Assembly (NCBI RefSeq): GCF_006345805.1
Contig: NC_043005.1
Location: 68,200,001-68,264,000 of the forward strand
Reading direction: 5' to 3'
DNA: 64,000 bases
From: Octopus sinensis
Taxonomy: Eukaryota
Notes under the pieces: generated by a model
Told to the model about the DNA's origin: nothing
Databases searched by the model: none
Seen by the model: only the letters and a program-made list of their open reading frames with translations
Position numbers and translations under genes: made by a program
Part shown: one piece after another, positions 21,710 through 43,378 of the stretch
Layout: the number at the start of each line of letters is the position of its first letter
Numbering within the stretch: position 1 is the stretch's first letter

Positions 21710-21751
<42 letters not shown>

Positions 21752-22478
21752 GTTTGTGTGTCTGTGTTTGTGCCCCCAACATCACTTGACAACCGATGCT
21801 GGTGTATTTACATCCCTGTAACTTACCACTTTGGCAAAAGAGACTAATAGAATAAGTACTAGGCTTACAAAGAATAAGTTCTGGGGCCGATTTGCTCGAC
21901 TAAAGGTGGTGCTCCAGAATGGCTTCAGTCAAATGAATGAAACGAGTAAAAGAGTATAAAGATGTACATGAACAGAAATATGTATATATATATATATATA
22001 TATATGTACATAATCACACTCACACACACACACACACACACACACACAGATGCAAGAGTGGCTGTATGGTAAAAAGGTTGCTTCCCAACTACATGGTTTT
22101 GGGTTCAGTCCCACTTCATGGCACCTTGGGCAAATGTCTTCTACTATAGCCTTGGGCCAACCAAAGCCTTGTGAGTGGATTTGCTAACTGGAAGCTGAAA
22201 GAAGCCCATCGTATATATATATATAAATTTATAAATAAGGATAATATCGATCTTATCAAGTGGCCAGCATGGGAATAAATACCATACAAAGGTAATAATT
22301 ATTTAAAACTATAAATTAGGGTATCTGAGAGATACCACTATGCTGAAATAGCAGTCAAAATCCTGAGGAATGGAACATTTAAGGTGGTTTTAGGGTCAGG
22401 GTTTTGACTGCTATTTCAGCATGGTGGTATCTCTCAGATACCCTAATTTATAGTTATATATATATATATATATATATA

Positions 22479-23090
22479 CAGGGTGCAGTGAATATATTGT
22501 CGTCTAAATTATGCAAAAATTAAAATAACACTGTCATCTCATTTTGACAGATATATTTATGAAAATTACAAAAAAATATCTTGAAATACTAAAGAGTAAA
22601 TTTATTCAGTAATGCCATTGGCTTCAACAACAACCTCCAGATAACATCGAAATCTCCTGCAACTCTTCTGGATGGTCTCCTTGTTTAAGTTAGCGAATGC
22701 TGCATTAATCCTTGTCTTCAGTTCATCTATGATGTACAAGGAGTTTTTGTTTTGTTGGTCTCTTGCTTAATTGTGTCTCACACATAATAATCAAAGGGGT
22801 TGCAGTGTGGGAAGTTAGGTGGCCCCAGATGTTAGGGGTGATGTGGTCACAGAAATTGTCTGACAGCAATGACTGGGTTTTCCTGCTTGTGTGGCATGGG
22901 GCAGAGTCCTGTTGCCAGACTTCGAGTGTTCCAGCAGCCACCCTCTTGACCCACTGCAGCACTACATCCTTCAGGCACTTGATGTAGGCCTCCATGTTGA
23001 GTCTGAGGTCATGTGGGAAGATGAATGGAAGCATGACGTTGCCTTCACTAGTGATCACTCCAAACACCATGATGCTTGATTCTTATCTCT
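22479..23090 (-). mobile_element. Tc1/mariner 3' remnant (duplicated at 23603-24210)
   Basis: MVFGVITSEG.VM.PFIF..LRLN.EAYIKCL..VVL.WV.RVAAG...VWQQDSAPCHTSRKTQ..LS.NFCDHITPNIW carries the WQQDSAPCH motif. A TA-cagggtg terminus is present. Confidence 0.85.
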
Positions 23091-24685
23091 CTCAATACAT
23101 GTTTTGAGGACACAGCAAGTCTCAGATTGACAGCCAGACACTCTGAAATGTTCATGTTGGAGCTTCTGGTGCAAATGCTAAGCAGTACAGTATGTTGTTT
23201 CTAATTTCTGGCAGTGAATTGTGTCATGGTGCTGTTTTACTCACTGTGCTCAACTGACCCTACTATACTGTGTGGTCAACAAAATCAAAAAGAAACAATG
23301 TGCATGCATAAAATCAAGCAAAAAAGAATGGTGTCTATTTACCAAATACATCCTATATATATACATATGTATTTGTGTGTCTGTCCCTCCACCATTGCTT
23401 GACAACTAATGTTGGTGGTTTTATGCCCCATAACTTAGCGGTTCAGAAAAAGAGACTGATACAATAACTACTAGGCTTACAAAGAATAAGTCCAGGGGCT
23501 TTTTGGTTGACTAAAGGTGGTGCTCCAGCATGGCCACAGTCAAATGAAGGAAACAAATAAAAGAATATATATATATATATATATAATATATATATATATA
23601 TACAGGGTGCAGTGAATATATTGTCGTCTAAATTATGCAAAAATTAAAATAACACTGTCATCTCATTTTGACAGATATATTATGAAAATTACAAAAAAAT
23701 ATCTTGAAATACTAAAGAGTAAATTTATTCAGTAATGCCATTGGCTTCAACAACAACCTCCAGATAAAATCGAAATCTCCTGCAACTCTTCTGGATGGTC
23801 TCCTTGTTTAAGTTAGCGAATGCTGCATTAATCCTTGTCTTCAGTTCATCTATGATGTACAAGGAGTTTTTGTTTTGTTGGTCTCTTGCTTAATTGTGTC
23901 TCACACATAATAATCAAAGGGGTTGCAGTGTGGGAAGTTAGGTGGCCCCAGATGTTAGGGGTGATGTGGTCACAGAAATTGTCTGACAGCAATGACTGGG
24001 TTTTCCTGCTTGTGTGGCATGGGGCAGAGTCCTGTTGCCAGACTTCGAGTGTTCTAGCAGCCACCCTCTTGACTCACTGCAGCACTACATCCTTCAGGCA
24101 CTTGATGTAGGCCTCCATGTTGAGTCTGAGGTCATGTGGGAAGATGAATGGAAGCATAACATTGTCTTCACTAGTGATCACTCCAAACACCATGATGCTT
24201 GATTCTTATCTCTCTCAATACATGTTTTGAGGACACAGCAAGTCTCAGATGACAGCCAGACACTCTGAAATGTTCATGTTGGAGCTTCTGGTGCAAATGC
24301 TAAGCAGTACAGTATGTTGTTTCTAATTTCTGGCAGTGAATTGTGTCATGGTGCTGTTTTACTCACTGTGCTCAACTGACCCTACTATACTGTGTGGTCA
24401 ACAAAATCAAAAAGAAACAATGTGCATGCATAAAATCAAGCAAAAAAGAATGTGTCTATTTACCAAATACATCCTATATATATACATATGTATTTGTGTG
24501 TCTGTCCCTCCACCATTGCTTGACAACTAATGTTGGTGGTTTTATGCCCCATAACTTAGCGGTTCAGAAAAAGAGACTGATACAATAACTACTAGGCTTA
24601 CAAAGAATAAGTCCAGGGGCTTTTTGGTTGACTAAGGTGGTGCTCCAGCATGGCCACAGTCAAATGAAGGAAACAAATAAAAGAA
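22479..24685. repeat. Direct tandem duplication, ~1.12-kb unit
   Basis: 22479-23565 and 23603-24685 are near-identical, offset by 1124 at the start and 1120 at the end, and bounded by (TA)n tracts. Confidence 0.92.
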
Positions 24686-24943
24686 TATATATATATATAT
24701 TATATATATATATAGTATAATATAAATAATATATAAATATATGCATATATACAATGGTTGGACAAAAAGTTGTATCAAATTGTTGATATAGCATGGACAT
24801 ACAGGTTCCCAAACAGCATCAGTGAAAATCCAAAAGAAAAAAAACTTTTGATTCAACCTGGTATCTGGCATTCATTAATACTGTAAAACAATATTTACTT
24901 CACCATAAAGTTCAGCATACATTTTTACACTGCATGTGTCATG

Positions 24944-24990
<47 letters not shown>

Positions 24991-25721
24991 GCTACTGATA
25001 CTGCTGCTGCTGCTGTGATGGTCATGGATAGTCATTTGACCTGCAAATAGCAGCTAGATTTACTCAACTCGTAACTTAATGACTTGAAATAGGAAGGATA
25101 CATTATATACTATAATCCTAAAAATACAACAATTGAAGGATGGCCATAATTGGAACATTTTTTATCATAAGCCTGCTGAGTCATAGCTCACTTGGTCTTA
25201 TACAAGAAAAACATGCGGTTTTGCATTCATATGTGCATTATTCACTCTGTAATGACACATGACAGTGAACTAAAGGGAGAAATCCTTCTATGCTTATGAC
25301 ACTAGGTTTAATGTATTCTGGGACTTCACTTAAAACACATCTAAATATGATTGTACATTAGAATGCATACTGAGGTGGAAAGTATAGGAAATTGAGCTTG
25401 TCAAAATAGTAACCATTCATTGAATATCATTAATTAAATTCACATTTTTATGATAAATTGGAAATTTTTACTTTTTATACTTAATTAATGTTTGTAGTTT
25501 TACATTATAATTTTAGTCTGTGTAGATATTGTCTATTTTCCCTACACTGCTAGTATGTCCTTGACCTAGAATCAAAAGACAACCTAATACTATTGCTAGT
25601 GTCTGTTGAAAGCATACATCTTCAAGTAGCATGATTATATTACAATAGTAATCTTAGGATACATTTACCCTTGTTTATTATGTGGGTTTGGTTCCTAAAA
25701 TACAAAGTGGTATATACAAAG

Positions 25722-26138
25722 GCTGCAAGCTGGCAGAAACGTAAACACGCTGGGCAAAATGCTTAGTAGTATTTCGTCTACCGTTACGTTCTCAGTTCAA
25801 ATTTCGCCAAAGTCAACTTTGCCTTTCATCCTTTCGGGGTCAATAAGTACCAGTTACGCATTGGGGGTCGATATAATCGACTTAATCCGTTTGTCTGTCC
25901 TTGTTTGTCCACTCTGTGTTTAGCCCCTTGTGGGTAGTAAAGAATTAGAAATAGGTATTTCGTTTGCCGTTACGTTCTGAGTTAAAATTCCGCTGAGGTC
26001 GACTTTGCTTTCATCATTTTGGGGTCGAAAAATTAAGGACCAGCTATGTACTGGGGTCGATATAATCGACTTAATCCGTTTGTCTGTCCTTGTTTGTCCT
26101 CTCTGTTTAGCCCCTTGTGGGTAGTAAAGAAATAGGTA
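25722..26138 (+). mobile_element. SINE family A copy with two body units
   Basis: Head followed by a tandemly duplicated body. Confidence 0.75.
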
Positions 26139-26199
26139 TATGTTTGCTTACTGCTGTTGCTTCATGCACTTGCTTGATGGGACTGGGGTCATCCCAGGT

Positions 26200-26520
26200 T
26201 AGTGGTCCCAGAGATATCATCAAGTAATAAGGCTGACCAGGTTTACCAGTGCTCTCTGTCACTTGTGGCCCCATGCCAGCCCCTCTGCATCCTCTAAGGT
26301 GACATTGATCCTCTGGAAATCTTCCCCAATCCCATCCAGCCATCTGACGTGGATTCTGCCTTGAGGCCTCTTCCTGCTTGCAACGGCTGTGTCAAATGGA
26401 AGCAAAGCCCTAATGTGATGATCTAGCAGGAGACGGAAGAGGACATATCCATACCAACACATGCAATGAATAGCTATGAGGTGGGAGGCTGTGGGCTGCA
26501 TCAGTGATAAATGAACTATT
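26200..26520 (-). mobile_element. LINE (RTE-like) ORF2 C-terminal remnant
   Basis: ...RKRPQGRIHVRWLDGIGED...VTLEDAEGLA resembles RP.GRP..RW.D.I..D. Confidence 0.6.
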
Positions 26521-27041
26521 TCCATAGATCATGTAAATAAAATGAATTGAAGATGCATTCATACCAAACCAGCTGCTCACAGCAGCAAAGCTTCTACCAT
26601 CACATTTTACTATCACATGTTAACAGATGAGTATATTCTGCAGAGAATAAGCACAGGTGCCTTCATATTTTTTACTCTCTTACACTTTTACTTGTTTCAG
26701 TCATTTGACTGTGGCCATGCTGGAGCAAATCGATCCCAGGACTTATTCTTTGTAGGACTAGTACTTATTCTATTGGTCTCTTTTGCCGAACTGCTAAGTT
26801 ATGGGGATGTAAACACACCAGCATTGGTTGTCAAGCGATTTTGGGGGGACAAACACAGACACACAAACGTATACACACACACACACACACATTTATACGA
26901 CGGGCTTCTTTCAGTTCCCGCCTACCACAGTAGAAGACACTTGCCCAAGGTGCCACGCAGTGGGACTGAACCCAGAACCATGTGGTTAGTAAGCAAGGTA
27001 CTTACCACACAGCCACTCCTACACCTATATATGTATATATA

Positions 27042-27073
<32 letters not shown>

Positions 27074-27324
27074 CAGTCTTTCTGTCTATTCATTGAACTG
27101 TTCTGTCAGTCTACAATTGCATGCATGTATTTATATTAGCATGTATGTATATACATGTATGCATGAGTGTATGCCAGTGTCTTTGTTTTCTAATTATTTG
27201 AATTCTTCTTCTGAAAGAGCTACTTTGAGCAAAGAAATAAAATCCCATCACTGAAGTCATGATAACAACAATGGGGAAGAGTTGCATGCTGGATTTTGAA
27301 AAGACTTTTATACCTAGGCACACA

Positions 27325-28145
27325 TGTATGCTCTGCATGTGTATGTATGCATGTATGTGTGTGTATCTCCATGTATATATGTATGTATGTGTGAATGTAT
27401 GTATGTAAGTATGTATGTGTGTGTATCTGCATGTATGTGTGAATGTATGTCTGTCTGTATGTATGTATGTATGTATGTATGTGTGTATGTATGTATGTAT
27501 GCATGTATATATGCGTGTGTATCTACATGTATGCATGTATGCATATATGCATGTATATATGTATGCATGTATATATGTATGTATTTATATATGTATGTGT
27601 CTGTATGTGTGTATGTATATATGTATATATGTGTGTGTATCTGCATGTATGTATGTATGTGTGTATGTGTATGTGTGTATGTATGTGTATATATATGTGT
27701 GTATATCTGCATGTAAGTATGTATGCATGCATGCATGTATATATGTATGTATTTATGTATGTATGTGTGTGTATGTGTGTATGTATATATATATGTATAT
27801 ATGTATGTGTGCGTATCTGCATGTATTTTTGTATGTATATGTGTGTGTGTATATATGTATATATGTGTATCTGCATGTATGTGTGTGTCTATGTGTATGT
27901 GTGTATGTATGTATGTTTGCATGTATATTGTATATGGGTATGCATGTGTGCGTGCATTTTGTATATATGTGTATCTTCATGTGTATATCTTGTGTGTAAG
28001 TATTTCGTATATAAGTATGTAGTATATATGTGTATATATGTGTGTGTATGCATGCATGCATGCTTGTATATTTGCACGTGTGTGTATTTATACATGAATA
28101 CATGTGTATATATGCATGCAAGCATACATGAGTATATCTGCATGT
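27325..28145. repeat. Degenerate (TG/TA/TATG)n low-complexity tract
   Basis: Purine-pyrimidine alternation with a recurrent gtatctgcatgta word. Confidence 0.9.
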
Positions 28146-28920
28146 ATCTTCCTCTCTACCTATCAACCTCTTTATCAACCTAACTTGCCCTCCTTCAATT
28201 CATCCATTCATAGATGAATAGATAGGCTCTTCTTTTCATATATGCTTATACACACACACACTCACAGAAGTATATATACTTTCTCTCTGACATACTTGCA
28301 CACACACAGACACACACACATGAGGACAATTTTTCTTCTTCAAAGATGAACACGAGCTACAGTGCAAACAGAACAGTCCATCGCATGCACACATGCACTG
28401 TTTTGATTCCGTCGAGCATCCTTCTACAGACATCAGTAAACACGTACATTCTGACAGTCTGCTTCGTATTTTCTGATGACATCTAATTAGCAAGAACGTT
28501 TGATGAATCTAATGAACACAGATACAAAGGAAAATTAAGATTAGAAAAAAAAAAAACGTGGGCAATTTTTTTCGATGCAAACACTGTTTATAGTATATTT
28601 ATAGTTATGTATGATTATAAAATCTGCGTATGCATACACACATATGTATGCATATATGCATACTATATATATATATGTATGTATGTATATATACATACTA
28701 TATATGTATGCATTTATATATATATATATCTGTGCAGGTGGCACGTAAAATACACCCACTACACTCGCGGAGTGGTTGGCGTTACGAAGGGCATCCAGCC
28801 GTAGAAACACTGCCAGATCTGACTGGGCCTGACGAAGCCTTCCAGCTTCACAGACCCCACTTGACCCGTCCAACCCATGCTAGCATGGAAAATGGACGCT
28901 AAACGATGATGATGATGATG

Positions 28921-29216
28921 ATATATATATATATATATATACATAAACACATATATGTGTATTATATATTATAATATTATATATATGAATATATATATAT
29001 AGACATATATGTACATATATATGTGTATATATGTATATATATATAATATTATATATATATATATATACACACATATATGTATATATATATATATATATAT
29101 ATGAATTATTATATATATAATATATATATATACATACACACATATATGTATATAGTATATATATATATATATATATGAATATATATATATTATATATATA
29201 TATATACATACACACA

Positions 29217-29247
<31 letters not shown>

Positions 29248-29355
29248 GAATATATATATATATATATTATATGTACATATATATGTGTATATATGTATAT
29301 ATATATATATATATATTATATACATACACACATATATGTATATATATAATATATA

Positions 29356-29411
<56 letters not shown>

Positions 29412-29473
29412 TATATATATATAGATATATATGTACATATATATGTGTATATATGATATATATGTATATATAT
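28921..29473. repeat. (TA)n tract with higher-order repetition, left flank of the hammerhead array
   Basis: The punctuation words atatgaatat and tacacacatatatgtat recur at intervals of roughly 60-130 bp. Confidence 0.85.
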
Positions 29474-29591
29474 AAACAATTAGGAGTGACCCTAACAGGT
29501 CACTCGTCCACCAGAAAGAGCAGCCATAACTCACCGCCAAGTAGTAGTAATTCAGAAATTAGGTGAAAATTAAAAACATTTACCCTAATTC

Positions 29592-29694
29592 ATCTTTTAG
29601 ACGTTGCAACGTTTCTGTGTCATTAATGATTAAACTAGCTTAATTAATTAAATTAAGCTAATCTACCATAGGTTACACTTCATCAGTAAAAAAC
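29592..29694 (-). ncRNA. Type I hammerhead motif, forward unit 1 (core intact)
   Basis: Plus-strand tcatcag (29680-86) and tttc (29612-15) are CUGAUGA and GAAA on the minus strand. The stem III palindrome is intact. Confidence 0.75.
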
Positions 29695-31483
29695 CTGGGA
29701 GAGACAAATATACACGAGGCGTCTGTATCGATGCCTACGGAATATCTGTCTTAAAATTTTCAAGACTGACGTATTCGCGCCAAACTTATCAGCAGTAAAT
29801 ATAACTGCCGATTCAATCTCAGAATTATTCAGAAAATTATCAATTAGTCATTTAGGGTAGCAAAAAAATTCAATAGAAATTTATCGCTACCAGCGGCCTG
29901 GTGGAAAAGAGAAAATAGTCATCGACTAAATATATAAATATAACAATTTAGGAGTGACCCTAACAGGTCACTCGTCCACCAGAAAGAGCAGCCATAACTC
30001 ACACCGCCAAGTAGTGTAATTCAGAAATTAGGTGAAAATTTAAAAACATTTACCCTAATTCATCTTTTAGACGTTTGCACGTTTCTGTGTCATTAATGAT
30101 TAAATTAGCTTAATTAAATTAAATTAAGCTAATCTACCATAGGTTACACTTCATCAGTAAAAAACCTGGGAGAGACAAATATACACGAGGCGTCTGTATC
30201 GATGCCTACGGAATATCTGTCTTAAAATTTTCAAGACTGACGTATTCGCGCCAAACTTATCAGCAGTAAATATAAACTGCCGATTCAATCTCAGAATTAT
30301 TCAGAAAATTATCAATTAGTCAATTTAGGGTAGCAAAAAAAATTCAATAGAAATTTATCGCTACCAGCGGCCTGGTGGAAAAGAGAAAATAGTCATCGAC
30401 TAAATATATAAATATAACAATTTAGGAGTGACCCTAACAGGTCACTCGTCCACCAGAAAGAGCAGCCATAACTCACACCGCCAAGTAGTAGTAATTCAGA
30501 AATTAGGTGAAAATTTAAAAACATTTACCCTAATTCATCTTTTAGACGTTGCAACGTTCTGTGTCATTAATGATTAAATTAGCTTAATTAAATTAATTAA
30601 GCTAATCTACCATAGGTTACACTTCATCAGTAAAAAACCTGGGAGAGACAAATATACACGAGGCGTCTGTATCGATGCCTACGGAATATCTGTCTTAAAA
30701 TTTTCAAGACTGACGTATTCGCGCCAAACTTATCAGCAGTAAATATAAACTGCCGATTCAATCTCAGAATTATTCAGAAAATTATCAATTAGTCAATTTA
30801 GGGTAGCAAAAAAATTCAATAGAAATTTATCGCTACCAGCGGCCTGGTGGAAAAGAGAAAATAGTCATCAACTAAATATATAAATATAACAATTAGGAGT
30901 GACCCTAACAGGTCACTCGTCCACCAGAAAGAGCAGCCATAACTCAACCGCCAAGTAGTAGTAATTCAGAAAGAAATTAGGTGAAAATTTAAAAACATTT
31001 ACCCTAATTCATCTTTTAGACGTTGCAACGTTCTGTGTCATTAATGATTAAATTAGCTTAATTAAATTAAATTAAGCTAATCTACCATAGGTTACACTTC
31101 ATCAGTAAAAAACCTGGGAGAGACAAATATACACGAGGCGTCTGTATCGATGCCTACGGAATATCTGTCTTAAAATTTTCAAGACTGACGTATTCGCGCC
31201 AAACTTATCAGCAGTAAATATAAACTGCCGATTCAATCTCAGAATTATTCAGAAAATTATCAATTAGTCATTTAGGGTAGCAAAAAAATTCAATAGAAAT
31301 TATCGCTACCAGCGGCCTGGTGGAAAAGAGAAAATAGTCATCGACTAAATATATAAATATAACAATTTAGGAGTGACCCTAACAGGTCACTCGTCCACCA
31401 GAAAGAGCAGCCATAACTCACACCGACAAGTAGTGTAGTAATTCAGAAATTAGGTGAAAATTTAAAAACATTTACCCTAATTC

Positions 31484-31587
31484 ATCTTTTAGACGTTGCA
31501 ACGTTTCTGTGTCATTAATGATTAAATTAGCTTAATTTAATTAAATTAAGCTAATCTACCATAGGTTACACTTCATCAGTAAAAAAC
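31484..31587 (-). ncRNA. Type I hammerhead motif, forward unit 5 (core intact)
   Basis: Same motif with GAAA and stem III intact. Confidence 0.75.
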
Positions 31588-31957
31588 CTGGGAGAGACAA
31601 ATATACACGAGGCGTCTGTATCGATGCCTACGGAATATCTGTCTTAAAATTTTCAAGACTGACGTATTCGCGCCAAACTTATCAGCAGTAAATATAAACT
31701 GCCGATTCAATCTCAGAATTATTCAGAAAATTATCAATTAGTCAATTTAGGGTAGCAAAAAAATTCAATAGAAATTTATCGCTACCAGCGGCCTGGTGGA
31801 AAAGAGAAAATAGTCATCAACTAAATATATAAATATAACAATTTAGGAGTGACCCTAACAGGTCACTCGTCCACCAGAAAGAGCAGCCATAACTCACACC
31901 GCCAAGTAGTAGTAATTCAGAAATTAGGTGAAAATTTAAAAACATTTACCCTAATTC

Positions 31958-32061
31958 ATCTTTTAGACGTTGCAACGTTTCTGTGTCATTAATGATTAAA
32001 TTAGCTTAATTAAATTAAATTAAGCTAATCTACCATAGGTTACACTTCATCAGTAAAAAAC
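31958..32061 (-). ncRNA. Type I hammerhead motif, forward unit 6 (core intact)
   Basis: Same motif with GAAA and stem III intact. Units 2 (30062-30165), 3 (30537-30638), 4 (31011-31113) and 7 (32431-32533) carry variants. Confidence 0.75.
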
Positions 32062-32746
32062 CTGGGAGAGACAAATATACACGAGGCGTCTGTATCGATG
32101 CCTACGGAATATCTGTCTTAAAATTTTCTAGACTGACGTATTCGCGCCAAACTTATCAGCAGTAAATATAAACTGCCGATTCAATCTCAGAATTATTCAG
32201 AAAATTATCAATTAGTCAATTTAGGGTAGCAAAAAAAATTCAATAGAAATTTATCGCTACCAGCGGCCTGGTGGAAAAGAGAAAATAGTCATCGACTAAA
32301 TATATAAATATAACAATTTAGGAGTGACCCTAACAGGTCACTCGTCCACCAGAAAGAGCAGCCATAACTCACACCGCCAAGTAGTAGTAATTCAGAAATT
32401 AGGTGAAAATAAAAACATTTACCCTAATTCATCTTTTAGACGTTGCAACGTTCTGTGTCATTAATGATTAAATTAGCTTAATTAAATTAAATTAAGCTAA
32501 TCTACCATAGGTTACACTTCATCAGTAAAAAACCTGGGAGAGACAAATATACACGAGGCGTCTGTATCGATGCCTACGGAATATCTGTCTTATATCTGAC
32601 TAATTTTCTGAATAATTCTGAGATTGAATCGGCAGTTTATATTTACTGCTGATAAGTTTGGCGCGAATACGTCAGTCTTGAAAATTTTAAGACAGATATT
32701 CCGTAGGCATCGATACAGACGCCTCGTGTATATTTGTCTCTCCCAG

Positions 32747-32850
32747 GTTTTTTACTGATGAAGTGTAACCTATGGTAGATTAGCTTAATTTAATTTAATT
32801 AAGCTAATTTAATCATCAATGACACAGAAACGTTGCAACGTCTAAAAGAT
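32747..32850 (+). ncRNA. Type I hammerhead ribozyme motif (sense to host gene), core intact
   Basis: Stem I GUUUUUUA (32747-54) pairs with UAAAAGAU (32843-50). CUGAUGA at 32755-61. Stem II is GUGU/ACAC with a large structured insert. GAAA at 32827-30, stem III CGUUGCAACG, UC with predicted cleavage after 32842. Confidence 0.8.
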
Positions 32851-33219
32851 TGAATTAGGGTAATGTTTTTAAATTTTCACCTAATTTCTGAATTACTACT
32901 ACTTGGCGGTGTGAGTTATGGCTGCTCTTTCTGGTGGACGAGTGACCTGTTAGGGTCACTCCTAAATTGTTATATTTATATATTTAGTCGATGACTATTT
33001 TCTCTTTTCCACCAGGCCGCTGGTAGCGATAAATTTCTATTGAATTTTTTTGCTACCCTAAATTGACTAATTGATAATTTTCTGAATAATTCTGAGATTG
33101 AATCGGCAGTTTTATTTACTGCTGATAAGTTTGGCGCGAATACGTCAGTCTTGAAAATTTTAAGACAGATATTCCGTAGGCATCGATACAGACGCCTCGT
33201 GTATATTTGTCTCTCCCAG

Positions 33220-33322
33220 GTTTTTTACTGATGAAGTGTAACCTATGGTAGATTAGCTTAATTTAATTTAATTAAGCTAATTTAATCATTAATGACACAG
33301 AAACGTTGCAACGTCTAAAGAT
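33220..33322 (+). ncRNA. Type I hammerhead ribozyme motif (sense to host gene), core intact
   Basis: CUGAUGA at 33228-34, GAAA at 33300-03, CGUUGCAACG then UC, predicted cleavage after 33315. The 3' strand of stem I is one A shorter (UAAAG). Confidence 0.75.
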
Positions 33323-33542
33323 GAATTAGGGTAAATGTTTTTAAATTTTCACCTAATTTCTGAATTACTACTACTTGGCGGTGTGAGTTATGGCTGCTCT
33401 TTCTGGTGGACGAGTGACCTGTTAGGGTCACTCCTAAATTGTTATATTTATATATTTAGTCGATGACTATTTTCTCTTTTCCACCAGGCCGCTGGTAGCG
33501 ATAAATTTCTATTGAATTTTTTTGCTACCCTAAATTGACTAA

Positions 33543-33581
<39 letters not shown>

Positions 33582-33651
33582 GTATATATATATATGTATA
33601 TATATATATGTATATATATTATATATATAAATACACACATGTATACATATA

Positions 33652-33812
33652 TTCTGAGTTCAAATTCCGCCGAGGTCGACTTTGCCTTTTATCCTTTCAG
33701 GTTCGATAAATTAAGTGCCAGTTACACACCGGGGTCGATGTAATCGACTTAATCCCTTTGTCTGTCCTTGTTTGTCCCCTCTATGTTTAGCCTCTTGTGG
33801 GCAATAAAGAAA
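33652..33812 (+). mobile_element. 5'-truncated SINE family A copy
   Basis: Body only, immediately downstream of the TA tract that ends the hammerhead array. Confidence 0.7.
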
Positions 33813-34537
33813 GAAGAAACTAAGCCAAAACAGACTGGAGCCAAGCGCAGCTCTTCGGCTTACTAATTCCAGTCAAACTGTCTAACCCATGTCGGTATGG
33901 AAAAACAGATGCTAAATGATGCTGATGCTGATCATGATGAGGTATCATTCCAGCCACTTCTTGAAGGCCTCATGGAAGTCCTTCAAGGTGAAAGTGTCCA
34001 GACCCTTGTCACAGCCTCCTTCATCAAAATAACTGTTTTTGGATGCTCTTCCTAACGCCAAGCACTTTATAGAGTGTACTGGGTGCTATTACATAGCAGT
34101 GGCTTGGGTGCTTTCTACCTGACACAAGCACCTATGAGCCTGCAAGAGCAAGGATGCTCAGCTGGAGAGCGTTGTAAAGGATGAGCCTGTATGCAAGGAC
34201 AACTATGCTTTTACTCAGCTTGATGTGTCTTTTTAATCACAGCAAACCACCAGGATTTTTGGTCCCCTGTCATAGGTTACACATGCCAGCGACACGTGTA
34301 GGGCACACATGCTGGTGATACATGTGAGGCACACATGCTGGTGACAAGTGTGAGGCACATGTGATGATGAGTCATGGCCAGTGCTGGTGGCATGTAAAAG
34401 GCATCCGTGCCAGTGATGCATAAGGTACATGTGCCAGTGACACATATGAGGCATCTATGCTGGTGAGATGGAGAAGAAACCTGTGTCAGTGACATGCAAA
34501 AGACACCCATGCCAGTGGCACGAAAAAATGTACTCAT

Positions 34538-34681
34538 AGGTGCAGGAGTGGCTGTGTTCCGGGTTCAGTCCCACTGCGTGACACCTTGGGCAAGTGTCTT
34601 CTACTATAGCTTCAGGCCGACCAAAGTCTTATGAGTGGATTTGGTAGATGGAAACTGAAAGAAGCCCATCATATATATATG

Positions 34682-34712
<31 letters not shown>

Positions 34713-34927
34713 ATATGTTTGTGTGTCTGTGTTTGTCCCCCCAACATTGCTTAACAACCAATGCTGGTGTGTTTACATCCCCATACCTTAGCGGTTCGGC
34801 AAAAGACGCCGATAGAATAAGTACTAGGCTTACAAAGAATAAGTACTGGGGTTGAATTGCTCGAGTAATGGCGGTGCTCCAGCATGACCTCAGTCAAATG
34901 ACTGAAACAAGTAAATGAGTAAAAGAG
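34538..34927 (+). mobile_element. SINE family B copy
   Basis: Same head, core and tail. Other copies: 14062-14470(-), 21620-21952(+), 22027-22210(+), 26665-27025(-), 35706-36120(-), 42119-42548(+), 42708-43098(-), 43140-43510(-), 53845-54238(-), 63615-63770(+). Confidence 0.8.
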
Positions 34928-35365
34928 TATATCAGTGACATGAAAAAGGAATTCCTACTGATGACACATAAAAGGTACCTGTGCAGGTGATATGTTAAAA
35001 GCACCCATGCTGGTGACATGTAAGGGATGCCCAGTGCATATGCCTGTGTTCATATATCAATCTAGTTCAACAAATTTACCATATATTTCTACATTTATTT
35101 TGATTTCAAATGTTGGTGCAAAGCCACCAATTCCCGGGGTAAGTTGATTACATCGACCCCAGTGGTCAAATAGTATTTACTTAATCAACCCAAAGAGGAT
35201 GAAAGGCAAAGTCAACCTAAGCAGAATTTGAACTCAGAACAAGAAGAGGGATGAAATACCACTAAGCATTTTGCCTGGTGTGCTAACAATTCTGCCAGCT
35301 CGCTACCTTTTTTTTCATCATTTTTACTCTAGGCAAAAAGCCTGAAATTTTGAGGGAGGGGGCCA

Positions 35366-35705
35366 GTCGATTAGATCGACCCCAGTATGCAACTGATACT
35401 TAATTTATCGACCCTGAAAAGATGAAAGGCAAAGTCGACTTTGGCTGAATTTGAACTCAGAACGTAGCAGCAAACGAAATACCTGTTTTTTACTACCCAC
35501 AAGGGGCTAAACACAGAGAGGACAAACAAGGACAGTCAAATGAATTATATCGACCTCAGTGCGTAACTGGTACTTAATTTATCGACCTCGAAAGGATGAA
35601 AGGTAAAGTCGACCTTGGCGGAATTTGAACTCAGAACATAGCGGCAGACGAAATTCCGCTAAACATTTCACCCGGCGTGCTAACGCTTCTGCCAGCTCAC
35701 CACCT
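35366..35705 (-). mobile_element. SINE family A copy with duplicated body
   Basis: Reverse-complement family A motifs. An older degenerate copy lies at ~35140-35310. Confidence 0.7.
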
Positions 35706-36529
35706 TTTACTACTCTTTTACTTGTTTCAGTCATTTGACTGTGGCCATGCTGGAGCACCGCATTTAGCTGAGCAACTCGACCCTAGGACTTATTCTTTGT
35801 AACCCTAATACTTATTCTATCGGTCTCTTTTTACCGAACCACTAAGTTACAGGGACATAAACACACCAGCATCGGTTGTCAATCGATGTTGGGGGGACAA
35901 ACACAGACACAAAAACATATACACACACACACACATACATATATATACATATATATGACAGGCTTCTTTCAGTTTCTGTCCACCAAATCTACTCACAAGG
36001 CTTTGGTCGGCCCGAGGCTATAGTAGAAGACACTTGCCCAAAGTGCCATGCAGTGGGACTGAACCCGGAACCATGTGGTTCGTAAGCAAGCTACTTACCA
36101 CAGAGTCACTCCTATGCCTATATTGATATAGATATGTATCGATAGAGAAGGAAATAGAGAAATGTAAAAGAGTGTAATATTATTCAGTGCGGCATATACA
36201 AAAATATATTACATCATGAACTAATGAAATATTCTGAGTAGTTTCTACAGATACATCCTTCTCAGATTTATTTATTTTATACCTCTATGCAAGCAAATTG
36301 TTTCCAGTATTTTCATATTTTCTTTTTAGATGTTTCTTGATTTGTTTTTTTCTTCATCTTTTTCTTTTTATGCAACATTTAGCTCTTCTTCCCATCTGGT
36401 ACTACTATGTAGAGGTAGGAACCTAACCAAAGTTATGTAGTTTCAGTATTATGTTGTTATTGTTTTATCTGCTTCTTACTAGTTACTATTTTTCTTTCCT
36501 TTGTATTGATTTTATAGTTGCTAGTTACT

Positions 36530-36632
36530 ATTGTTATTGTTGTTACCATTATTATTATCATCATCATCATCATCATCACCACCACCAACACCACCACCAC
36601 CATCACCACCACCACCATCATCATCATCATCA

Positions 36633-36686
<54 letters not shown>

Positions 36687-36797
36687 CTGTTGTTATTATT
36701 ATTATCATCATCATCATCATCATTATTATCATAATCATTATCATTATTATTATTATTATCATCATCATCATCATTGTTATTATTATTATCATTATCA

Positions 36798-36831
<34 letters not shown>

Positions 36832-36870
36832 TGTTGTTATTGTTGTTACTGTTGTAGTTGCCGTTACAAC
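36530..36870. repeat. Compound trinucleotide microsatellite (ATT/ATC/ACC/GTT)
   Basis: Direct reading. It is the source of the poly-I/H/Y ORFs. Confidence 0.95.
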
Positions 36871-37086
36871 TGAGTGACGTTATCTTTAATATTTTAACAT
36901 TTGATGGACATTCCCTCATGAAGTCAAAGCAACCATGATTTTATGCTTTATCAAATTTTGTTTGTCATCATTAAAAAAATAATGGCATTAAAATATAATA
37001 CAGTATACCATATATATATATGTGTGTGTGTGTATGTGTGTTTGTGTGTGTCTGTGTGTGCATGCATGTCAGTACTCATATATGTG

Positions 37087-37122
<36 letters not shown>

Positions 37123-37428
37123 CTCACACATGCACACACATTTGCACACAGGTACATACATTCATATAGAGATACATATATACACACATATATATATGTG
37201 TGTGTATGTACATGCCTATTGATTATAAAGAATATAAATGTATCTTATCTTCTTATATATTTTTCCCTTTAATGATTTTATTTTGCGGTTACATTGGAAA
37301 TATCTTTTGTTCTTTTAATAATTTAATATTCTTGTACATACGTACCTGCATACATATATATATATACATAAATATGTATATGTATATATAATATATAATA
37401 TATATATATATGCACACACACAAACATA

Positions 37429-37477
<49 letters not shown>

Positions 37478-37702
37478 CTTATATTCATTATTGTCATCAT
37501 CATCATAGTTTAATATCCGCTTTCCATGCTGACATTGGTTGGACGGTTTAACTGAGGACTGGCAGGCCAGATGGCTGAACCAGTCTCCAATCTGATGTGG
37601 CAGAGTTTCTACAGCTGGATTCCCTTCCTAATGCCAACCATTCTGAGAGTGTAATGGGTGCTTTTATGTGCCACCAGCAAGAGGGCCACACACATATATA
37701 TA

Positions 37703-40010
37703 TGACATAACATTCCAGATGTTCCAGGCATTCCACATGACATTCCAGACATACCAGAAATTCCAGAAATGACAGGCATGACGTTCCAGACATTCCAGAA
37801 ATTCAACATGACATTGCAGACATACCAGACATGACATTCCAGACATTCCAGATATTCCAGACATTCCAGACATGTGATGCAACGTGACATTCCATTCCAT
37901 CCATGACGTGACGTGACGTGTCATTTCATTCCATGATGTGATGTGACGTGACATGACATGACATTCATGACATCACATTCCTGACAGGACATGACATTCA
38001 TGGCATGATATCGATGACGTGACATTCATGACATGATATGACATTCATGACATGTCAAGTCATGAATGTCATGAATGTCATGCATGTCATGTCATGTCAC
38101 GTCATTCCAGACATTCCATGCATTCCATTCCGTGATATGACATTCCAGACATTCCATGACATGACATTCTAGACATTCCAGACATTCCATGACATTACAG
38201 ATATTCCATTTCATGACATGACATTCCAGACATTCCAAGACATGACATTCCCGATATTCCAGACATGACATTCCAGGCATTCCATTCCATGGCATGACAT
38301 TGCAGACATTCCTTGACATGACAGTCCAAATATTCCAGACATTCCATGACATGTCATTCCAGACTTTCCATGACATGACATGCCAGACATTCCAGATATT
38401 TCAGACATGACATTTCAGACATTCCAGACATTGCAGGCATTCCATTCCATGATATAACATTCCAGACATTCCATGACATGGCATTCCAGACATTCTAATC
38501 CATGACATGACATTCAAGACATTCCAAACATTCTATAACATGACATTTCAGACATTCTATGACATGACATTCCAGAGTTTCCATGACATGACATTCCAGA
38601 CATTCCAGACACGACATTTCAGACATTCCAGGCATTTTATGACATTCCAAACATTCCATTCCATGACATAACATTCCAGACACTCCAGACATAACATTCC
38701 ATAATTCCAGACATTCCATTCTGTGACGTGACGTTACATTCCATTCCATTCTGTCACATGACGTGACATGATATTCTATTCCATTCCATGACGTGACGTG
38801 ACATTCCATTCCATTCTGTGACGTGACGTGACATGATATTCCATTCTGTGACGTGATATTCCATGACATGCCATAACATGACGTGACTTTCCATTCCATT
38901 CCATGACGTGACGTGACATTCCATTCCATTCTGTCACGTGACGTGGCATTCTATTCCATTCCATGACGTGACGTGACATTCCATGATGTGACGTGACGTA
39001 ACCTTCCATTTCATTCCATGACGTGACGGGATGTGACATTCATTCCATGACGTGACGTGACATTCCATTTCATTCCATGTCGTGACCTGACATGACATTC
39101 CATTCCATTCCATGATGTGATGTGACGCGACATTCCATGATGTGATGTGACGTGGCATTCCATTTCATTCCATGACGTGACAGGATGTGACATTCCATTC
39201 CATGACATGACGTGACATTCCATTTCATTCCATGTCGTGACCTGACGTGACATTCCATTCCATTCCATGATGTGACGTGACGTGACATTCCATTTCATGA
39301 CGTGACGTGACATTCCATTTCATGACGTGACGTGACATTCCATTTCGTGACGTGACGTGACATTCCATTCCGTGACGTGACTTTCCATTCCATTCCATGA
39401 CATGACACTCCATTCCATTCCATCACGTGACGTGACGTGACATTCCATTCCATGACATGACATTCCAGACATTCCAGACATTCCATGACATGACATTCCA
39501 GTCATTTTAGACATGAAATTCCAGACATGACATTCCAGACATGACATTCCAGACATGACATTCCAGACATGACATTCCAGATATGACATTCCCGACATTC
39601 CAGACATTCTAGACATGACGTGAAATTCCATTCCATTCAAATTCTATGACGTGACGTGACCTGATGTGGCATGACGTGACCTGATGTGACATGACGTGAC
39701 ATGGCATGACATGACATTCATGACATTCATGACATGATATGACATTCATGACATGATATGACATTCATGACATGATATGGCATTACATTCATGATATTCA
39801 TGACATACCATGATATTCCAGACATGACATTTCATGACATTCCAGACATTGCAGCCATTCCATGACATACTATGACATGACATTCCAGACATTCCAGATA
39901 TTCCACACATGACATTCCAGATATTCCAGACATGACATTCCAGTCATTCCAGACATTACAGACAACCCAGACATTCCAGACATTCCAGACATGATGTGAC
40001 ATTCCATTCC
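37703..40010. repeat. Compound pentamer-based minisatellite (ATTCC/GACAT/GACGT/CCAGA)
   Basis: About 2.3 kb built almost entirely from cattc, catga, gacat, gacgt and ccaga words. Confidence 0.9.
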
Positions 40011-40249
40011 AGTATTAGCATAAGTCCATGTGTGATAATTTTAGGTCCTTGAATCACTAGTTCATTTCATTCAATAGTCATTTATACAGTTTGTTTCTAC
40101 CCAGTTTCGTTCATGAAGTAGGAGTCAGTGCAAGGGTTAAGGTAAAGGATATCAGTCAAAGATGTCACTCAGTGGAATCGAAACTGATACCTCATGGTTG
40201 AGAAGCAAGCTTCTCAACTATCTGGTAATATTAGCATCTTTGAATAAAT

Positions 40250-40323
40250 ACATATAAATATATACACACATGCATACGTGAACACATATACACAATTCAT
40301 GCACATTTGTGTGTATGTGTGTG

Positions 40324-40369
<46 letters not shown>

Positions 40370-40885
40370 TATAGCATCATCATCATCAGCGTCTGATTTC
40401 CATGCTGGCAGGGGTTGGACCGTATATACATACACACACACATATATATGTAGGCACTCACACATATGCACACATGCAAATTTATATGTATGTATGCAAA
40501 TATATATATATATATAGGTGTGTATATATATGTGTGTGTATATATACGCATATATACAATTATATGTTTATATGTGTGTACATATATATATGTATGTATA
40601 TATACATATATATATAATATGTGTGTATGTGTATATATATACATGTATATATATTTGTGTGTATATATATATGTATATATATATATGTGTGTGTATATAT
40701 ATATATATATACATATACACATACATAAACACACATACACACACATATGTATGCACTTGTGTCTTATATAACTTTTTGTTCATAAACCTCTTTGCACATG
40801 CACTCATATATGTATGTTTATTTGTGTGTGTGTATGTGTGTGTGTATGTGTGTAGGTATGTGTCTATATATATATATATATATAC
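40250..40885. repeat. Degenerate (TA/TG/CA)n tract
   Basis: Direct reading. Confidence 0.9.
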
Positions 40886-41625
40886 GTGACAATTATAAAT
40901 TCCTCTATTTACATAATATCGAGGTCTCAATCATTCTTTTGTTGTCATACAATTACTACTAATATATATATATATATATATATGTATGTGTATATACAGA
41001 CATGCATAGACACAGTAAGTAATCTATATAGTGATTCTGTTGCACACTTATAAGCAATCATACAATCCTTTACAACATCATACTTACAGACAGTTGGACA
41101 AAACACGTCCATATAGATAGTTGCAAAGGAAGACAAATCTTCACTGATCAAGAGTAAAACAAAAAAAAAAAAATAAACACAAGAAACAAACAAACAACCA
41201 CCAAATCAATTAAAATTGATTACAAAAGAATAAATGTGTCTTATCTTATTTCCTGCTGTGTTTTTTTCCCTTTAATGATTTTGTTTGGTTGTGCCGCTGT
41301 TATGGAAGGAGGTTTCTTAGATTCTGTTAATTATTTGATTAGAATTACATATAGTTAAAAGAACAACAACAACAACAAAAAAAATGCCTTCCAAACAATA
41401 GATGTTATTCAAAAATTCATACAAGATATAAATTCAGTAAATAGGTAAATAAGCCATATCATTTTACACCCCACCACTCTCAGTTCATTGGTTTCTGTGT
41501 TCTGCCACATTTATCTCAGCTCATCTCACATCGCTGCCATTTATTACAAACTTAATTTGCCAGAAACTTATATATAATTTTATAACTTTTCTGTCAGCTG
41601 TGGTGATAGTGATATATTATTAGTG

Positions 41626-42238
41626 CTTGACAGTACGGTTTTGCTTGGAGAACATGAATAACTCTATTGTTAGAACAGCTGACAGAATGGTTGTTAAGTT
41701 TGGCAGTGTCAATATTGTCCTCGGTACTTTGCTTGTATACATGGAAATAAAAAAACAAACCAACAAACATCCTTTATAGAATCTTTCAATCTAGAAATAA
41801 TAACCAATAGGTACGGGCATGGCTGTGTGGTAAGAAGCTTGCTTCCCAAGCACGTGGTTCTGGGTTCAGTTCTGCTGTGTGACATTTTGGGCAAATGTCT
41901 TCTACTATAGCGTCAGGCCAACCAAAGCCTTGACAGTATGGTTTTGCTTGGAGAACATGAATAACTGTATTGTTAGAACAGCTGACGGAATGGTTGTTAA
42001 GTTTGGCAGTGTCAATATTGTCCTTGGTACTCTGCTTGTATACATGGAAATAAAAAAAAACAAAAATAACAAACAAACATCCTTTATACAATCTTTCAAT
42101 CTAGAAATAATAACCAATAGGTGCAGGCATGGCTGTGTGGTAAGAAGCTTGCTTCCCAAGCACGTGGTTCTGGGTTCAGTTCTGCTGTATGACATTTTGG
42201 GCAAATGTCTTCTACTATAGCGTCAGGCCAACCAAAGC
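41626..42238. repeat. Direct tandem duplication, ~303-310-bp unit
   Basis: cttgacagta(c/t)ggttttgcttggagaac starts at both 41626 and 41929. Each unit ends in a family B SINE head. Confidence 0.9.

Positions 42239-43327: not shown

Positions 43328-43378
<51 letters not shown>

What the first reader, a model, noticed from the sequence alone, without database searches (positions are those of the whole stretch)
31738..33542. Fold-back inversion puts two core-intact ribozymes on the sense strand of the SLC19 pre-mRNA and creates an ~855-bp hairpin
Seen: the array flips orientation at ~32592/32598. 31738-32592 is complementary to 32688-33542, with a 95-nt loop. The seven forward motifs are antisense to the host gene, while the two inverted ones (cleaving after 32842 and 33315) lie on the transcribed strand of intron 2. 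Inference: host transcription alone could cut the nascent intron twice and release a 473-nt monomer with no promoter of its own. Alternatively, the long duplex could sequester the ribozymes and become an ADAR or Dicer substrate, which matters because coleoid cephalopods edit RNA extensively. Either route could affect splicing or processing of the transporter transcript.
Basis: partly seen in the sequence, partly recalled or inferred. Interest (0 to 1): 0.72.

Follow-up and report, generated by a model that had tools for sequence, protein, structure and literature searches.

The report
Head-to-head ribozyme repeat insertion in octopus intron
A young, species-specific insertion of a hammerhead-ribozyme-like 474-bp tandem repeat (a "retrozyme") sits in an intron of an Octopus sinensis vitamin-transporter gene with its two blocks head to head. 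This layout is more likely the normal footprint of how such elements insert than a later inversion, and the intron RNA is predicted to fold into a long double strand rather than cut itself.

Summary
A 474-nt tandem array (29465-32592, 6.6 units) abuts 2.0 inverted units (32601-33542). Two hammerhead-like motifs lie on the + strand, with predicted cuts after 32842 and 33315. The + strand is the sense strand of an SLC19-family gene, and the array lies in its 23.7-kb intron (21317-44989).

New findings:
- The window is Octopus sinensis CM016867.1.
- The whole array is missing from the orthologous gene in O. vulgaris and O. bimaculoides, so it is a young, lineage-specific insertion. It sits inside a (TA)n microsatellite.
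- The two blocks meet 5'-end to 5'-end on the ribozyme strand. The junction is asymmetric by 87 nt and carries an 8-nt filler.
- Partial tandems, an inverted 5'-truncated copy and a (TA)n target are the published signature of Penelope-like-element integration, the proposed mobiliser of animal retrozymes.

The "fold-back inversion" is therefore most likely the original insertion architecture.

Rfam does not recognise the motif, which has an A·A mismatch at 10.1/11.1 and a long helix II. Three of the seven antisense copies lack a core A.

At thermodynamic equilibrium both sense ribozymes are buried in an 850-940-bp duplex. A generic ADAR-type dsRNA fate is more plausible than self-cleavage. Nothing shows an effect on the host gene.

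The parts
28921..29474 (.). Left (TA)n-rich microsatellite, the insertion target. It ends with ATGTATATATATA (29462-29474).
   Evidence: TRF and sequence. The O. vulgaris ortholog has only the microsatellite here.
29465..32592 (-). Forward block F: 6.6 units of the 474-nt repeat. The ribozyme-sense strand is the - strand, so the 3' end lies at the left microsatellite. The 5' end is truncated at unit position ~320, at 32592.
32593..32600 (.). 8-nt junction filler TATCTGAC. It repeats the TATCTG at 32582-32587.
   Evidence: Sequence.
32601..33542 (+). Inverted block R: 2.0 units, ribozyme-sense on the + strand, which is the host sense strand. The 5' end is at unit position ~233 and the 3' end at ~231, abutting the right microsatellite.
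33543..33653 (.). Right (TA)n microsatellite. It starts with ATGTATATATATA (33543-33555), a possible 13-nt target-site duplication.
32746..32851 (+). Sense hammerhead-like motif 1. CUGAUGA starts at 32755, and the predicted cut follows C32842. Helix I has 9 bp, helix II has 4 bp plus an extension, and helix III has 4 bp with loop UGCA.
   Evidence: Descriptor scan and sequence.
33222..33321 (+). Sense hammerhead-like motif 2. CUGAUGA starts at 33228, and the predicted cut follows C33315. Helix I has 6 bp.
29592..32061 (-). Four antisense-to-host motifs that pass the descriptor. Core start/cut site: 32053/31966, 31579/31492, 30157/30070, 29686/29600.
30537..32533 (-). Three antisense-to-host motifs with GAA instead of GAAA, a 1-nt deletion in the core. 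Core start/cut site: 32525/32439, 31105/31019, 30630/30545.
31738..32592 (+).
   Evidence: 848 of 855 positions complementary to 32688-33542.
32688..33542 (+).
21317..44989 (+). Host intron (GT...AG, 23,673 nt) of the SLC19-family gene that contains the array.
   Evidence: tblastn of P0001/P0031 and splice sites.

Best explanation
The feature is one young insertion of a non-autonomous, hammerhead-bearing tandem repeat (an animal 'non-LTR retrozyme', unit 474 nt) into a (TA)n microsatellite. The site lies in an intron of the Octopus sinensis SLC19-family gene.

The head-to-head arrangement is best read as the primary product of target-primed reverse transcription from both sides of the break. 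This is twin priming, as seen in Penelope-like-element insertions. The 3' ends of the ribozyme-sense strand are anchored in the microsatellite on each side. The two variably 5'-truncated cDNAs are joined in the middle through a short filler.

In the host pre-mRNA, the six and a half antisense units are transcribed first. The two sense units that follow are predicted to zip onto them and form an 855-942-bp near-perfect duplex that buries both sense ribozymes. The likely fate is that of any young intronic inverted repeat: a nuclear dsRNA that ADAR can edit and that is removed with the intron. No specific role for the transporter gene is expected.

Shown: the anatomy, the strands, the empty orthologous sites and the equilibrium fold. 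Inferred: the integration mechanism, the kinetic dominance of the duplex and ribozyme activity.
For: Array and orientation.

Species and locus: 100% identity over 35,037 nt to O. sinensis CM016867.1.

Empty sites:
- The O. vulgaris ortholog is collinear at ~96% identity, but window 28729-33540 corresponds to 115 nt of TA repeat, and no repeat unit occurs anywhere in 51 kb.
- The O. bimaculoides orthologous gene has no 474-nt array and no unit or ribozyme sequence.

Architecture:
- The 5' ends of the ribozyme-sense strand abut at 32592/32601.
- The truncation points differ (unit position ~320 vs ~233), with an 8-nt filler between them.
- Both outer ends run into (TA)n, and a possible 13-nt duplication ATGTATATATATA flanks the array.

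Literature:
- Animal retrozymes are proposed to be mobilised by PLEs (PMC7229834; bioRxiv 10.64898/2026.07.22.740005).

Retrozyme features:
- A type I hammerhead descriptor is met in 6 of 9 copies, with 0 hits in 200 simulated 59.7-kb backgrounds.
- GC content is 34%.
- The monomer RNA has an MFE of -143 kcal/mol with z = -8.4.
- Units differ by ~8 substitutions and ~25 mostly homopolymer indels in ~4 kb, so the array is young.

Duplex: the MFE of 31738-33542 is -1515 kcal/mol with 847 inter-arm pairs, and both sense motifs are sequestered. In the whole-array fold, 935 of 942 R nucleotides pair with F.

Metazoan A-to-I editing primarily targets dsRNA formed by young repeats (PMC9989829).
Against: - No other genomic copy of this repeat could be retrieved, so recurrence of the head-to-head layout is untested. 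A protein-ORF search found nothing, and the one metagenome hit was a chance match.
- No similarity to an autonomous octopus PLE was tested.
- The (TA)n preference is documented for Naiad PLEs, which lack hammerheads.
- The outer 3' ends of the two blocks are at different unit positions (~140 and ~231), and no PLE-type 30-40-bp tail was seen.
- Rfam hammerhead models do not match, and helix II opens with an A·A mismatch, so catalytic competence is unproven.
- The junction rests on a single PacBio-era assembly, with no reads available here.
- The duplex-over-cleavage argument is thermodynamic and qualitative, not measured.
Confidence: 0.55

Rival explanations
1. Host Pol II transcription of the intron lets the two sense-strand hammerheads cut after 32842 and 33315. 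This releases a 473-nt monomer that could circularise, and it perturbs splicing of the transporter pre-mRNA.
For: Both + strand motifs have all core nucleotides and three helices in type I topology. They lie on the transcribed strand of the intron. The monomer is highly structured, like retrozyme circRNAs. A retrozyme hammerhead with a mismatch at the base of helix II still cleaves, at 22% per hour as a monomer and better as a dimer (PMC7229834).
Against: Complementary antisense units are transcribed first, and the nearest one starts pairing 58 nt before the first sense ribozyme. At equilibrium, 102-105 of 105 ribozyme nucleotides are held in the long duplex. The A·A at 10.1/11.1 and the absence of any Rfam match argue for weak activity at best. 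The insertion is absent from two sister species, so there is no conserved role. The O. sinensis protein model is intact.
Confidence: 0.12
2. A direct array was inserted first. Later, a replication template switch (fold-back or inverted duplication of the MMBIR/FoSTeS type), or an inversion with deletion, created the two inverted units.
For: The 8-nt filler duplicates a nearby hexamer (TATCTG at 32582-32587 and 32593-32598), as is typical of microhomology-mediated junctions. All units are near-identical, so R could be a copy of any two F units.
Against: R is not more similar to the adjacent F units than to distant ones (932-935 of 942 in four of the five registers tested; 887 in the fifth, which runs past the array's left end into the flank). 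A second switch would be needed exactly at the array/microsatellite boundary. A simple inversion would also require an 88-nt deletion. The published PLE insertion architecture explains the same layout in one event.
Confidence: 0.2
3. Assembly artefact. A chimeric or palindromic long read, or a misjoin in a repeat, created the inverted block or the whole array in GCA_006345805.1.
For: There is only one assembly of this species at this locus. Unit differences are dominated by homopolymer indels, which are typical of uncorrected long-read consensus. The PLE literature notes that such structures trouble assemblies. The array is absent from O. vulgaris.
Against: A missed-adapter palindrome would be symmetric about the junction. 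Here the arms are offset by 87 nt plus an 8-nt filler. After exactly 2.0 units the sequence also returns to a right flank that is collinear with O. vulgaris. Both outer ends sit in the same microsatellite that is uninterrupted in O. vulgaris, as expected for a real insertion.
Confidence: 0.1
4. Two independent retrozyme insertions in opposite orientation landed in the same (TA)n hotspot.
For: A microsatellite target preference would make repeated hits plausible. The 3' ends of the two blocks are at different unit positions.
Against: No TA repeat remains between the blocks, only 8 nt. The blocks are equally young and near-identical.
Confidence: 0.07

Closest known systems
Metazoan non-LTR retrozymes (Cervera & de la Pena 2020, PMC7229834)
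   Same: A type I hammerhead-like motif once per unit of a short, AT-rich (34% GC) tandem repeat. The array is multimeric, the monomer RNA is strongly self-paired, and there are no LTR, PBS or PPT features. A mismatch at the base of helix II has a precedent in axolotl HHR_Amex2.
   Different: The 474-nt unit is slightly above the reported 150-450-nt range. Helix II carries a ~57-nt extension and opens with A·A. The motif is not detected by Rfam models. The searched retrozyme papers hold no mention of octopus or cephalopods. Expression and circRNA formation are untested.
Penelope-like element insertion architecture (Craig et al. 2021, PMC8557442) and L1 'twin priming' inversions (Ostertag & Kazazian 2001; from my own knowledge)
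   Same: Partial tandem plus an inverted 5'-truncated copy joined 5' to 5'. The 3' ends lie at the target. The target is a (TA)n microsatellite, and a target-site duplication is possible.
   Different: No RT/GIY-YIG ORF is present and no pLTR homology was tested. No 30-40-bp tail was seen. The (TA)n preference is documented for Naiads, which lack hammerheads.
Conserved intronic hammerheads of amniotes (HH9/HH10; De la Pena & Garcia-Robles 2010, cited in PMC7229834 ref. 22)
   Same: A hammerhead motif on the sense strand of an intron of a protein-coding gene.
   Different: Those are single-copy and ultraconserved. This one is a repeat-borne, species-specific insertion flanked by its own antisense copies.
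Intronic inverted repeats as ADAR substrates (inverted Alus; young repeats across Metazoa, PMC9989829)
   Same: Two near-identical copies in opposite orientation, less than 0.4 kb apart in one transcript, predicted to form long dsRNA.
   Different: The duplex is unusually long and perfect (855-942 bp, ~99%). One arm contains self-cleaving-ribozyme motifs. Editing was not examined.

Membership tests
Hammerhead ribozyme, type I | Conserved core: C3-U-G-A-N-G-A9, G12-A13-A14, A15.1-U16.1 and H17. | tested here: met
   Present in 6 of 9 copies, including both + strand copies. Three - strand copies have GAA for GAAA.
Hammerhead ribozyme, type I | Three helices around the core, with helix I open. 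| tested here: met
   Helix I has 6-9 bp. Helix II has 4 bp plus an extended hairpin. Helix III has 4 bp plus a tetraloop. There were 0 hits in ~24 Mb of simulated background.
Hammerhead ribozyme, type I | G10.1-C11.1 pair closing helix II. | tested here: not met
   The pair is A·A in all nine copies. A U·U precedent exists in axolotl retrozymes, with reduced activity.
Hammerhead ribozyme, type I | Match to the Rfam hammerhead covariance models. | tested here: not met
   No hammerhead family was reported at the gathering score. None was reported at E<=10 on 4.4 kb or on 141 nt.
Hammerhead ribozyme, type I | Self-cleavage 3' of H17. | not testable with these tools
   This needs in vitro transcription of a monomer and a dimer.
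Metazoan non-LTR retrozyme | Short tandem repeat (150-450 bp) with one type I HHR per unit, occurring as dimers to multimers. | tested here: met
   The unit is 470-475 nt, slightly above the range, with 8.6 units in total.
Metazoan non-LTR retrozyme | Low GC (<45-50%) and a highly self-paired monomer RNA. | tested here: met
   GC is 34%. MFE is -143 kcal/mol with z = -8.4, and 0 of 100 shuffles fold as well.
Metazoan non-LTR retrozyme | Mobility: presence/absence at orthologous sites and dispersed copies. | tested here: inconclusive
   Empty orthologous sites in O. vulgaris and O. bimaculoides support insertion. No second locus could be retrieved.
Metazoan non-LTR retrozyme | Expression as linear and circular monomer RNA. 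| not testable with these tools
   No transcriptome access.
PLE-type (twin-primed) insertion | Partial tandem with an inverted 5'-truncated copy adjacent to the 5' end. | tested here: met
   The 5' ends abut at 32592/32601, with truncation at unit positions ~320 and ~233.
PLE-type (twin-primed) insertion | Microsatellite, (TA)n, target. | tested here: met
   (TA)n lies on both sides and is uninterrupted in O. vulgaris.
PLE-type (twin-primed) insertion | Sequence relationship to the pLTR or 3' end of an autonomous PLE in the same genome. | not tested
   No octopus whole-genome search is available. Pfam scans of stray ORFs in the window found no RT or GIY-YIG domain.
Functional intronic hammerhead (HH9/HH10-like) | Conservation of the motif at the orthologous intron across species. 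| tested here: not met
   Absent from O. vulgaris and O. bimaculoides.

The most novel reading that the evidence does not exclude
The inverted retrozyme array works as a host-transcribed hairpin-RNA locus. Read-through of the SLC19 intron yields a ~0.9-kb perfect dsRNA. This dsRNA is either diced into small RNAs that silence the retrozyme family in trans or is hyper-edited by ADAR. A minority of transcripts might escape pairing and launch promoter-less retrozyme circRNAs from the two sense ribozymes. If so, PLE-type head-to-head insertions would automatically create their own silencing triggers.
Probability: 0.1. Interest if true: 0.65.

Novelty: new member of a known kind. Interest (0 to 1): 0.4.

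Why it matters
The locus is a clean natural example: empty sites in two sister species, intact junctions and a microsatellite target. It shows a hammerhead-bearing tandem repeat inserted with the tandem/inverted signature of Penelope-like elements. That gives structural support to the current proposal that animal retrozymes are mobilised by PLEs.

It also flags an octopus retrozyme family whose hammerhead variant escapes Rfam. Cephalopod ribozyme censuses based on Rfam will therefore miss it.

For the host gene it is probably just one more young intronic inverted repeat. It is a good candidate for hyper-editing but not a regulatory device.

Tried and rejected
1. Rfam scans at the gathering score and at E<=10, on 4.4 kb and on 141 nt, gave no hammerhead family. 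The only notable hit, 'mir-3927' at 32558-32722 (56 bits, below its threshold of 90), is simply the palindromic junction.

2. I searched 5.8 billion proteins with the concatenated ORFs of the repeat, to find other contigs carrying it. There were no hits.

3. A metagenome scan for the CUGAUGAAGUGU...ACACAGAAAC pattern gave one contig (L002). It has no helix III and no tandem repeat, so it is a chance match.

4. A Pfam scan of stray ORFs looked for a nearby PLE RT or GIY-YIG domain. Only sub-threshold noise came back.

5. I tested whether the inverted block is a mirror copy of the adjacent forward units. It is not: it is about equally similar to every full pair of forward units tested.

6. I tried to pin the exact orthologous empty site in O. 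bimaculoides through the flanking SINE. The SINE is not found there. Only absence from the whole gene can be stated.

7. L004 was never written to the script folder, so it was analysed only with the built-in tools.
Full report
**Observation**

Tandem Repeats Finder and the repeat finder show a 474-nt array at 29465-32592 (6.6 copies, 97% matches). It is followed directly by 32601-33542 (2.0 copies, 98% matches) in the opposite orientation.

They are complementary at 848 positions, with 3 mismatches and 8 gap columns, and are separated by 95 nt.

The motif CUGAUGA...GAAA...GUC occurs seven times on the - strand and twice on the + strand. The + strand GUC triplets end at 32842 and 33315, which are 473 nt apart.

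One refinement concerns the 95-nt 'loop'. It consists of an 8-nt filler (32593-32600, TATCTGAC) plus 87 nt of repeat. That 87 nt has partners in the other forward units. The whole 942-nt inverted block can therefore pair equally well with full pairs of forward units in four of the five registers tested: 932-935 of 942 positions (the fifth runs past the array's left end and scores 887). One such pairing uses 31696-32207 with a 393-nt loop.

**Host gene and species**

The largest ORF of the window (16496-17695, + strand) and three further + strand segments encode an SLC19/folate-carrier family protein.
- A database search returned 'folate transporter 1-like isoform X1' of Octopus vulgaris (P0001, Pfam PF01770).
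- Its 90% cluster contains the O. sinensis protein XP_029640814.1 (P0031), which matches the window's exons exactly.
- The coding exons are 16568-17675, 21124-21316, 44990-45131 and 49491-49604, all with GT/AG boundaries.
- The array lies in the 23,673-nt intron 21317-44989, and the + strand is the sense strand.
- The locus fetched for P0031 (L003, GCA_006345805.1, CM016867.1:68215568-68250604) is 100% identical to window 15568-50604 over 35,037 nt.
- The window is therefore O. sinensis chromosome sequence starting near 68.20 Mb.
- The O. vulgaris gene model starts about 17.7 kb upstream of the ATG exon. 'Intron 2' is thus correct only in coding-exon numbering.

**The array is a lineage-specific insertion**

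The O. vulgaris ortholog (L001, GCA_951406725.2) is collinear with the window at about 96% identity. However, window 26925-28729 aligns to L001 29946-31827, and window 33540-36157 aligns to L001 31942-34540. The 4.8 kb between 28729 and 33540 therefore corresponds to 115 nt of TA-rich microsatellite in O. vulgaris. No copy of the unit exists anywhere in the 51-kb locus.

The O. bimaculoides orthologous gene (L004) has only microsatellites. It has no 474-nt array and no match to two conserved 21-26-mers of the unit at up to 3 mismatches.

In the window the array is flanked by (TA)n on both sides, at 28921-29474 and 33543-33653. The same 13-mer, ATGTATATATATA, lies directly on either side (29462-29474 and 33543-33555). 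This is a possible target-site duplication, but it is weak evidence inside a microsatellite.

Absence from both the sister species and the outgroup makes insertion in the O. sinensis lineage the parsimonious reading.

The units differ by only about 8 substitutions and about 25 indel columns in roughly 4 kb, and the indels fall mostly in homopolymers. The array is therefore young. Some differences may be long-read consensus errors, including the missing A in the GAAA core of three forward copies.

**What the repeat is**

On the strand that carries the motif, each unit reads 5'-GGUUUUUUA-CUGAUGA-[A GUGU ...57 nt... ACAC A]-GAAA-CGU UGCA ACG-UC|UAAAAGAUG.

This has every invariant hammerhead core nucleotide in a type I layout, with helix I open:
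- Helix I has 6-9 bp.
- Helix II has 4 bp, extended by a long hairpin.
- Helix III is a 4-bp stem (ACGU/ACGU) with a UGCA loop, which together form a 12-nt palindrome.

A descriptor written for this layout hits only the array in the 64-kb window: 2 copies on the + strand and 4 on the - strand. It gave 0 hits in 200 second-order-Markov simulations of the 59.7-kb remainder on both strands. The three other - strand copies fail because GAAA is GAA.

Two defining features are not met:
- The helix II closing pair, 10.1/11.1, is A·A rather than G-C.
- No Rfam hammerhead model reports the motif, either at the gathering score or at E<=10 on 4.4 kb or 141 nt.

A mismatch at the base of helix II has a precedent in axolotl retrozyme HHR_Amex2. 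That ribozyme cleaves weakly as a monomer (22% in 1 h) and better as a dimer (PMC7229834).

The unit has 34% GC. The 473-nt monomer RNA folds with -143 kcal/mol and z = -8.4 against shuffles. These properties match the published definition of animal non-LTR retrozymes: type I HHR in 150-450-bp tandem repeats of low GC, producing highly self-paired RNAs (PMC7229834).

I file it as a probable new retrozyme family. Catalysis is unproven.

The two retrozyme papers I searched contain no mention of octopus or cephalopods. The giant squid genome paper reports 235 Rfam 'hammerhead 1' loci (PMC6962438).

**Why the orientation flips**

On the ribozyme-sense strand, the forward block runs from 32592 (5') down to 29465 (3'). 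The inverted block runs from 32601 (5') to 33542 (3'). The junction therefore joins two 5' ends, and both 3' ends abut the microsatellite. The two 5' ends are truncated at different unit positions, about 320 and about 233. They are joined through an 8-nt filler that repeats a hexamer lying 5 nt upstream of it.

This matches what is described for Penelope-like elements:
- Their insertions are '5'-truncated... often organized into partial tandems'.
[quoted passage not shown] PLEs are the proposed mobilisers of animal retrozymes (PMC7229834; bioRxiv 10.64898/2026.07.22.740005). The same topology arises by 'twin priming' in L1 insertions (from my own knowledge).

Under any two-sided target-primed model, the outer ends must be the 3' ends of the template RNA. 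Here that template is the hammerhead-sense strand for both blocks, which is a non-trivial consistency.

The left 3' end also falls within the unit's own TA-rich tract (unit positions ~130-145). That tract could anneal to a (TA)n target. This last point is inference.

My best explanation is therefore that the 'fold-back' is the primary insertion architecture and not a later inversion.

**Rival origins**

*Later template-switch or inverted duplication.* The templated-looking filler fits this idea. However, it needs a second switch exactly at the array/microsatellite boundary. The inverted block is also no closer to its neighbouring units than to distant ones.

*Simple inversion.* This would additionally require an 88-nt deletion.

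*Missed-adapter palindromic read artefact.* Such an artefact would be symmetric about the junction and would not return after exactly 2.0 units to a flank collinear with O. vulgaris. Even so, the structure rests on one long-read assembly, and I could not inspect reads.

*Two independent insertions.* These would be expected to leave TA repeats between the blocks, but only 8 nt are there.

**What it would do in the pre-mRNA**

Folding 31738-33542 gives -1515 kcal/mol with 847 inter-arm pairs. Of the 105 nt of each sense motif, 102 and 105 pair with the distant arm. In a fold of the whole array, 935 of the 942 nt of the inverted block pair with forward units.

The complementary units are transcribed first. 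The closest register starts pairing 58 nt before the first sense ribozyme emerges. I infer, without measurement, that zippering of the duplex will usually outrun assembly of a ~100-nt ribozyme that already has a weakened helix II.

The generic fate of such young, nearby inverted repeats in animals, including octopus, is A-to-I editing of the dsRNA (PMC9989829).

Release of a 473-nt monomer driven by the host promoter is possible only for transcripts that escape pairing.

Nothing indicates an effect on the transporter. The exons are intact and identical to the RefSeq model. The element is absent from the orthologs, so it cannot be a conserved regulatory device. A recent survey in Xenopus found retrozymes under-represented in introns, though 42-44% still overlap them. 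An intronic copy is thus unremarkable.

**Verdict**

- The feature is a new member of a known kind: an octopus non-LTR retrozyme with an atypical hammerhead.
- Its head-to-head layout, microsatellite target and empty orthologous sites make it a tidy illustration of PLE-type integration.
- Interest is moderate, at 0.4.
- The most novel reading not excluded is a host-transcribed hairpin locus that feeds small-RNA or editing pathways against the retrozyme family, or occasionally launches circRNAs. I give this about a 10% chance.

Noticed in passing
window 32597-32604 and 33535-33542: The inverted block is exactly 2.0 units long, with TGACTAA at both ends (counting a 7-nt internal deletion at the 5' end). 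This could reflect an integer number of laps on a circular template, or it could be coincidence (~2-3%).
   Followed up: partly
window 22446-24724: A ~1.16-kb tandem duplication (two copies, 98.5% identical) in the same intron. It appeared as off-diagonal self-hits when the window was compared with L003.
   Followed up: no
window 33655-33800; L001 32053-32120: A SINE-like element (GAGTTCAAATTCCGCCGAGGTCGAC...) lies immediately right of the (TA)n tract. It is shared with O. vulgaris but was not found by pattern in the O. bimaculoides gene. Translated fragments of this kind recur many times in the window's ORF list.
   Followed up: partly
window 32558-32722 (-): A sub-threshold Rfam hit to mir-3927 (56 bits; the gathering score is 90). 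It is only the palindrome at the head-to-head junction and not a microRNA gene.
   Followed up: yes
window 34556-34730 and 35897-36071: A second inverted repeat (175 nt, 87% complementary, 1166 nt apart) in the same intron. It is another potential dsRNA former (I20).
   Followed up: no
window 36146-42359: A minisatellite-rich stretch (for example the 9-nt ACATTCCAG array at 37710-37873). It is only 84-88% identical to O. vulgaris and aligns in overlapping registers, so it evolves much faster than the ~96% identity of the rest of the locus.
   Followed up: no
window 5516-5736 (-): The alternative N-terminus of the O. vulgaris isoform P0002 aligns here at 52% identity. It looks like a retroelement-derived ORF fragment. 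The neighbouring gene in L001 carries DUF7041.
   Followed up: no
window 30545-30630, 31019-31105, 32439-32525 (-): Three forward ribozyme copies lack one A of the GAAA core. Most differences between units are homopolymer indels, so these may be consensus errors of the long-read assembly rather than real inactivating mutations.
   Followed up: partly
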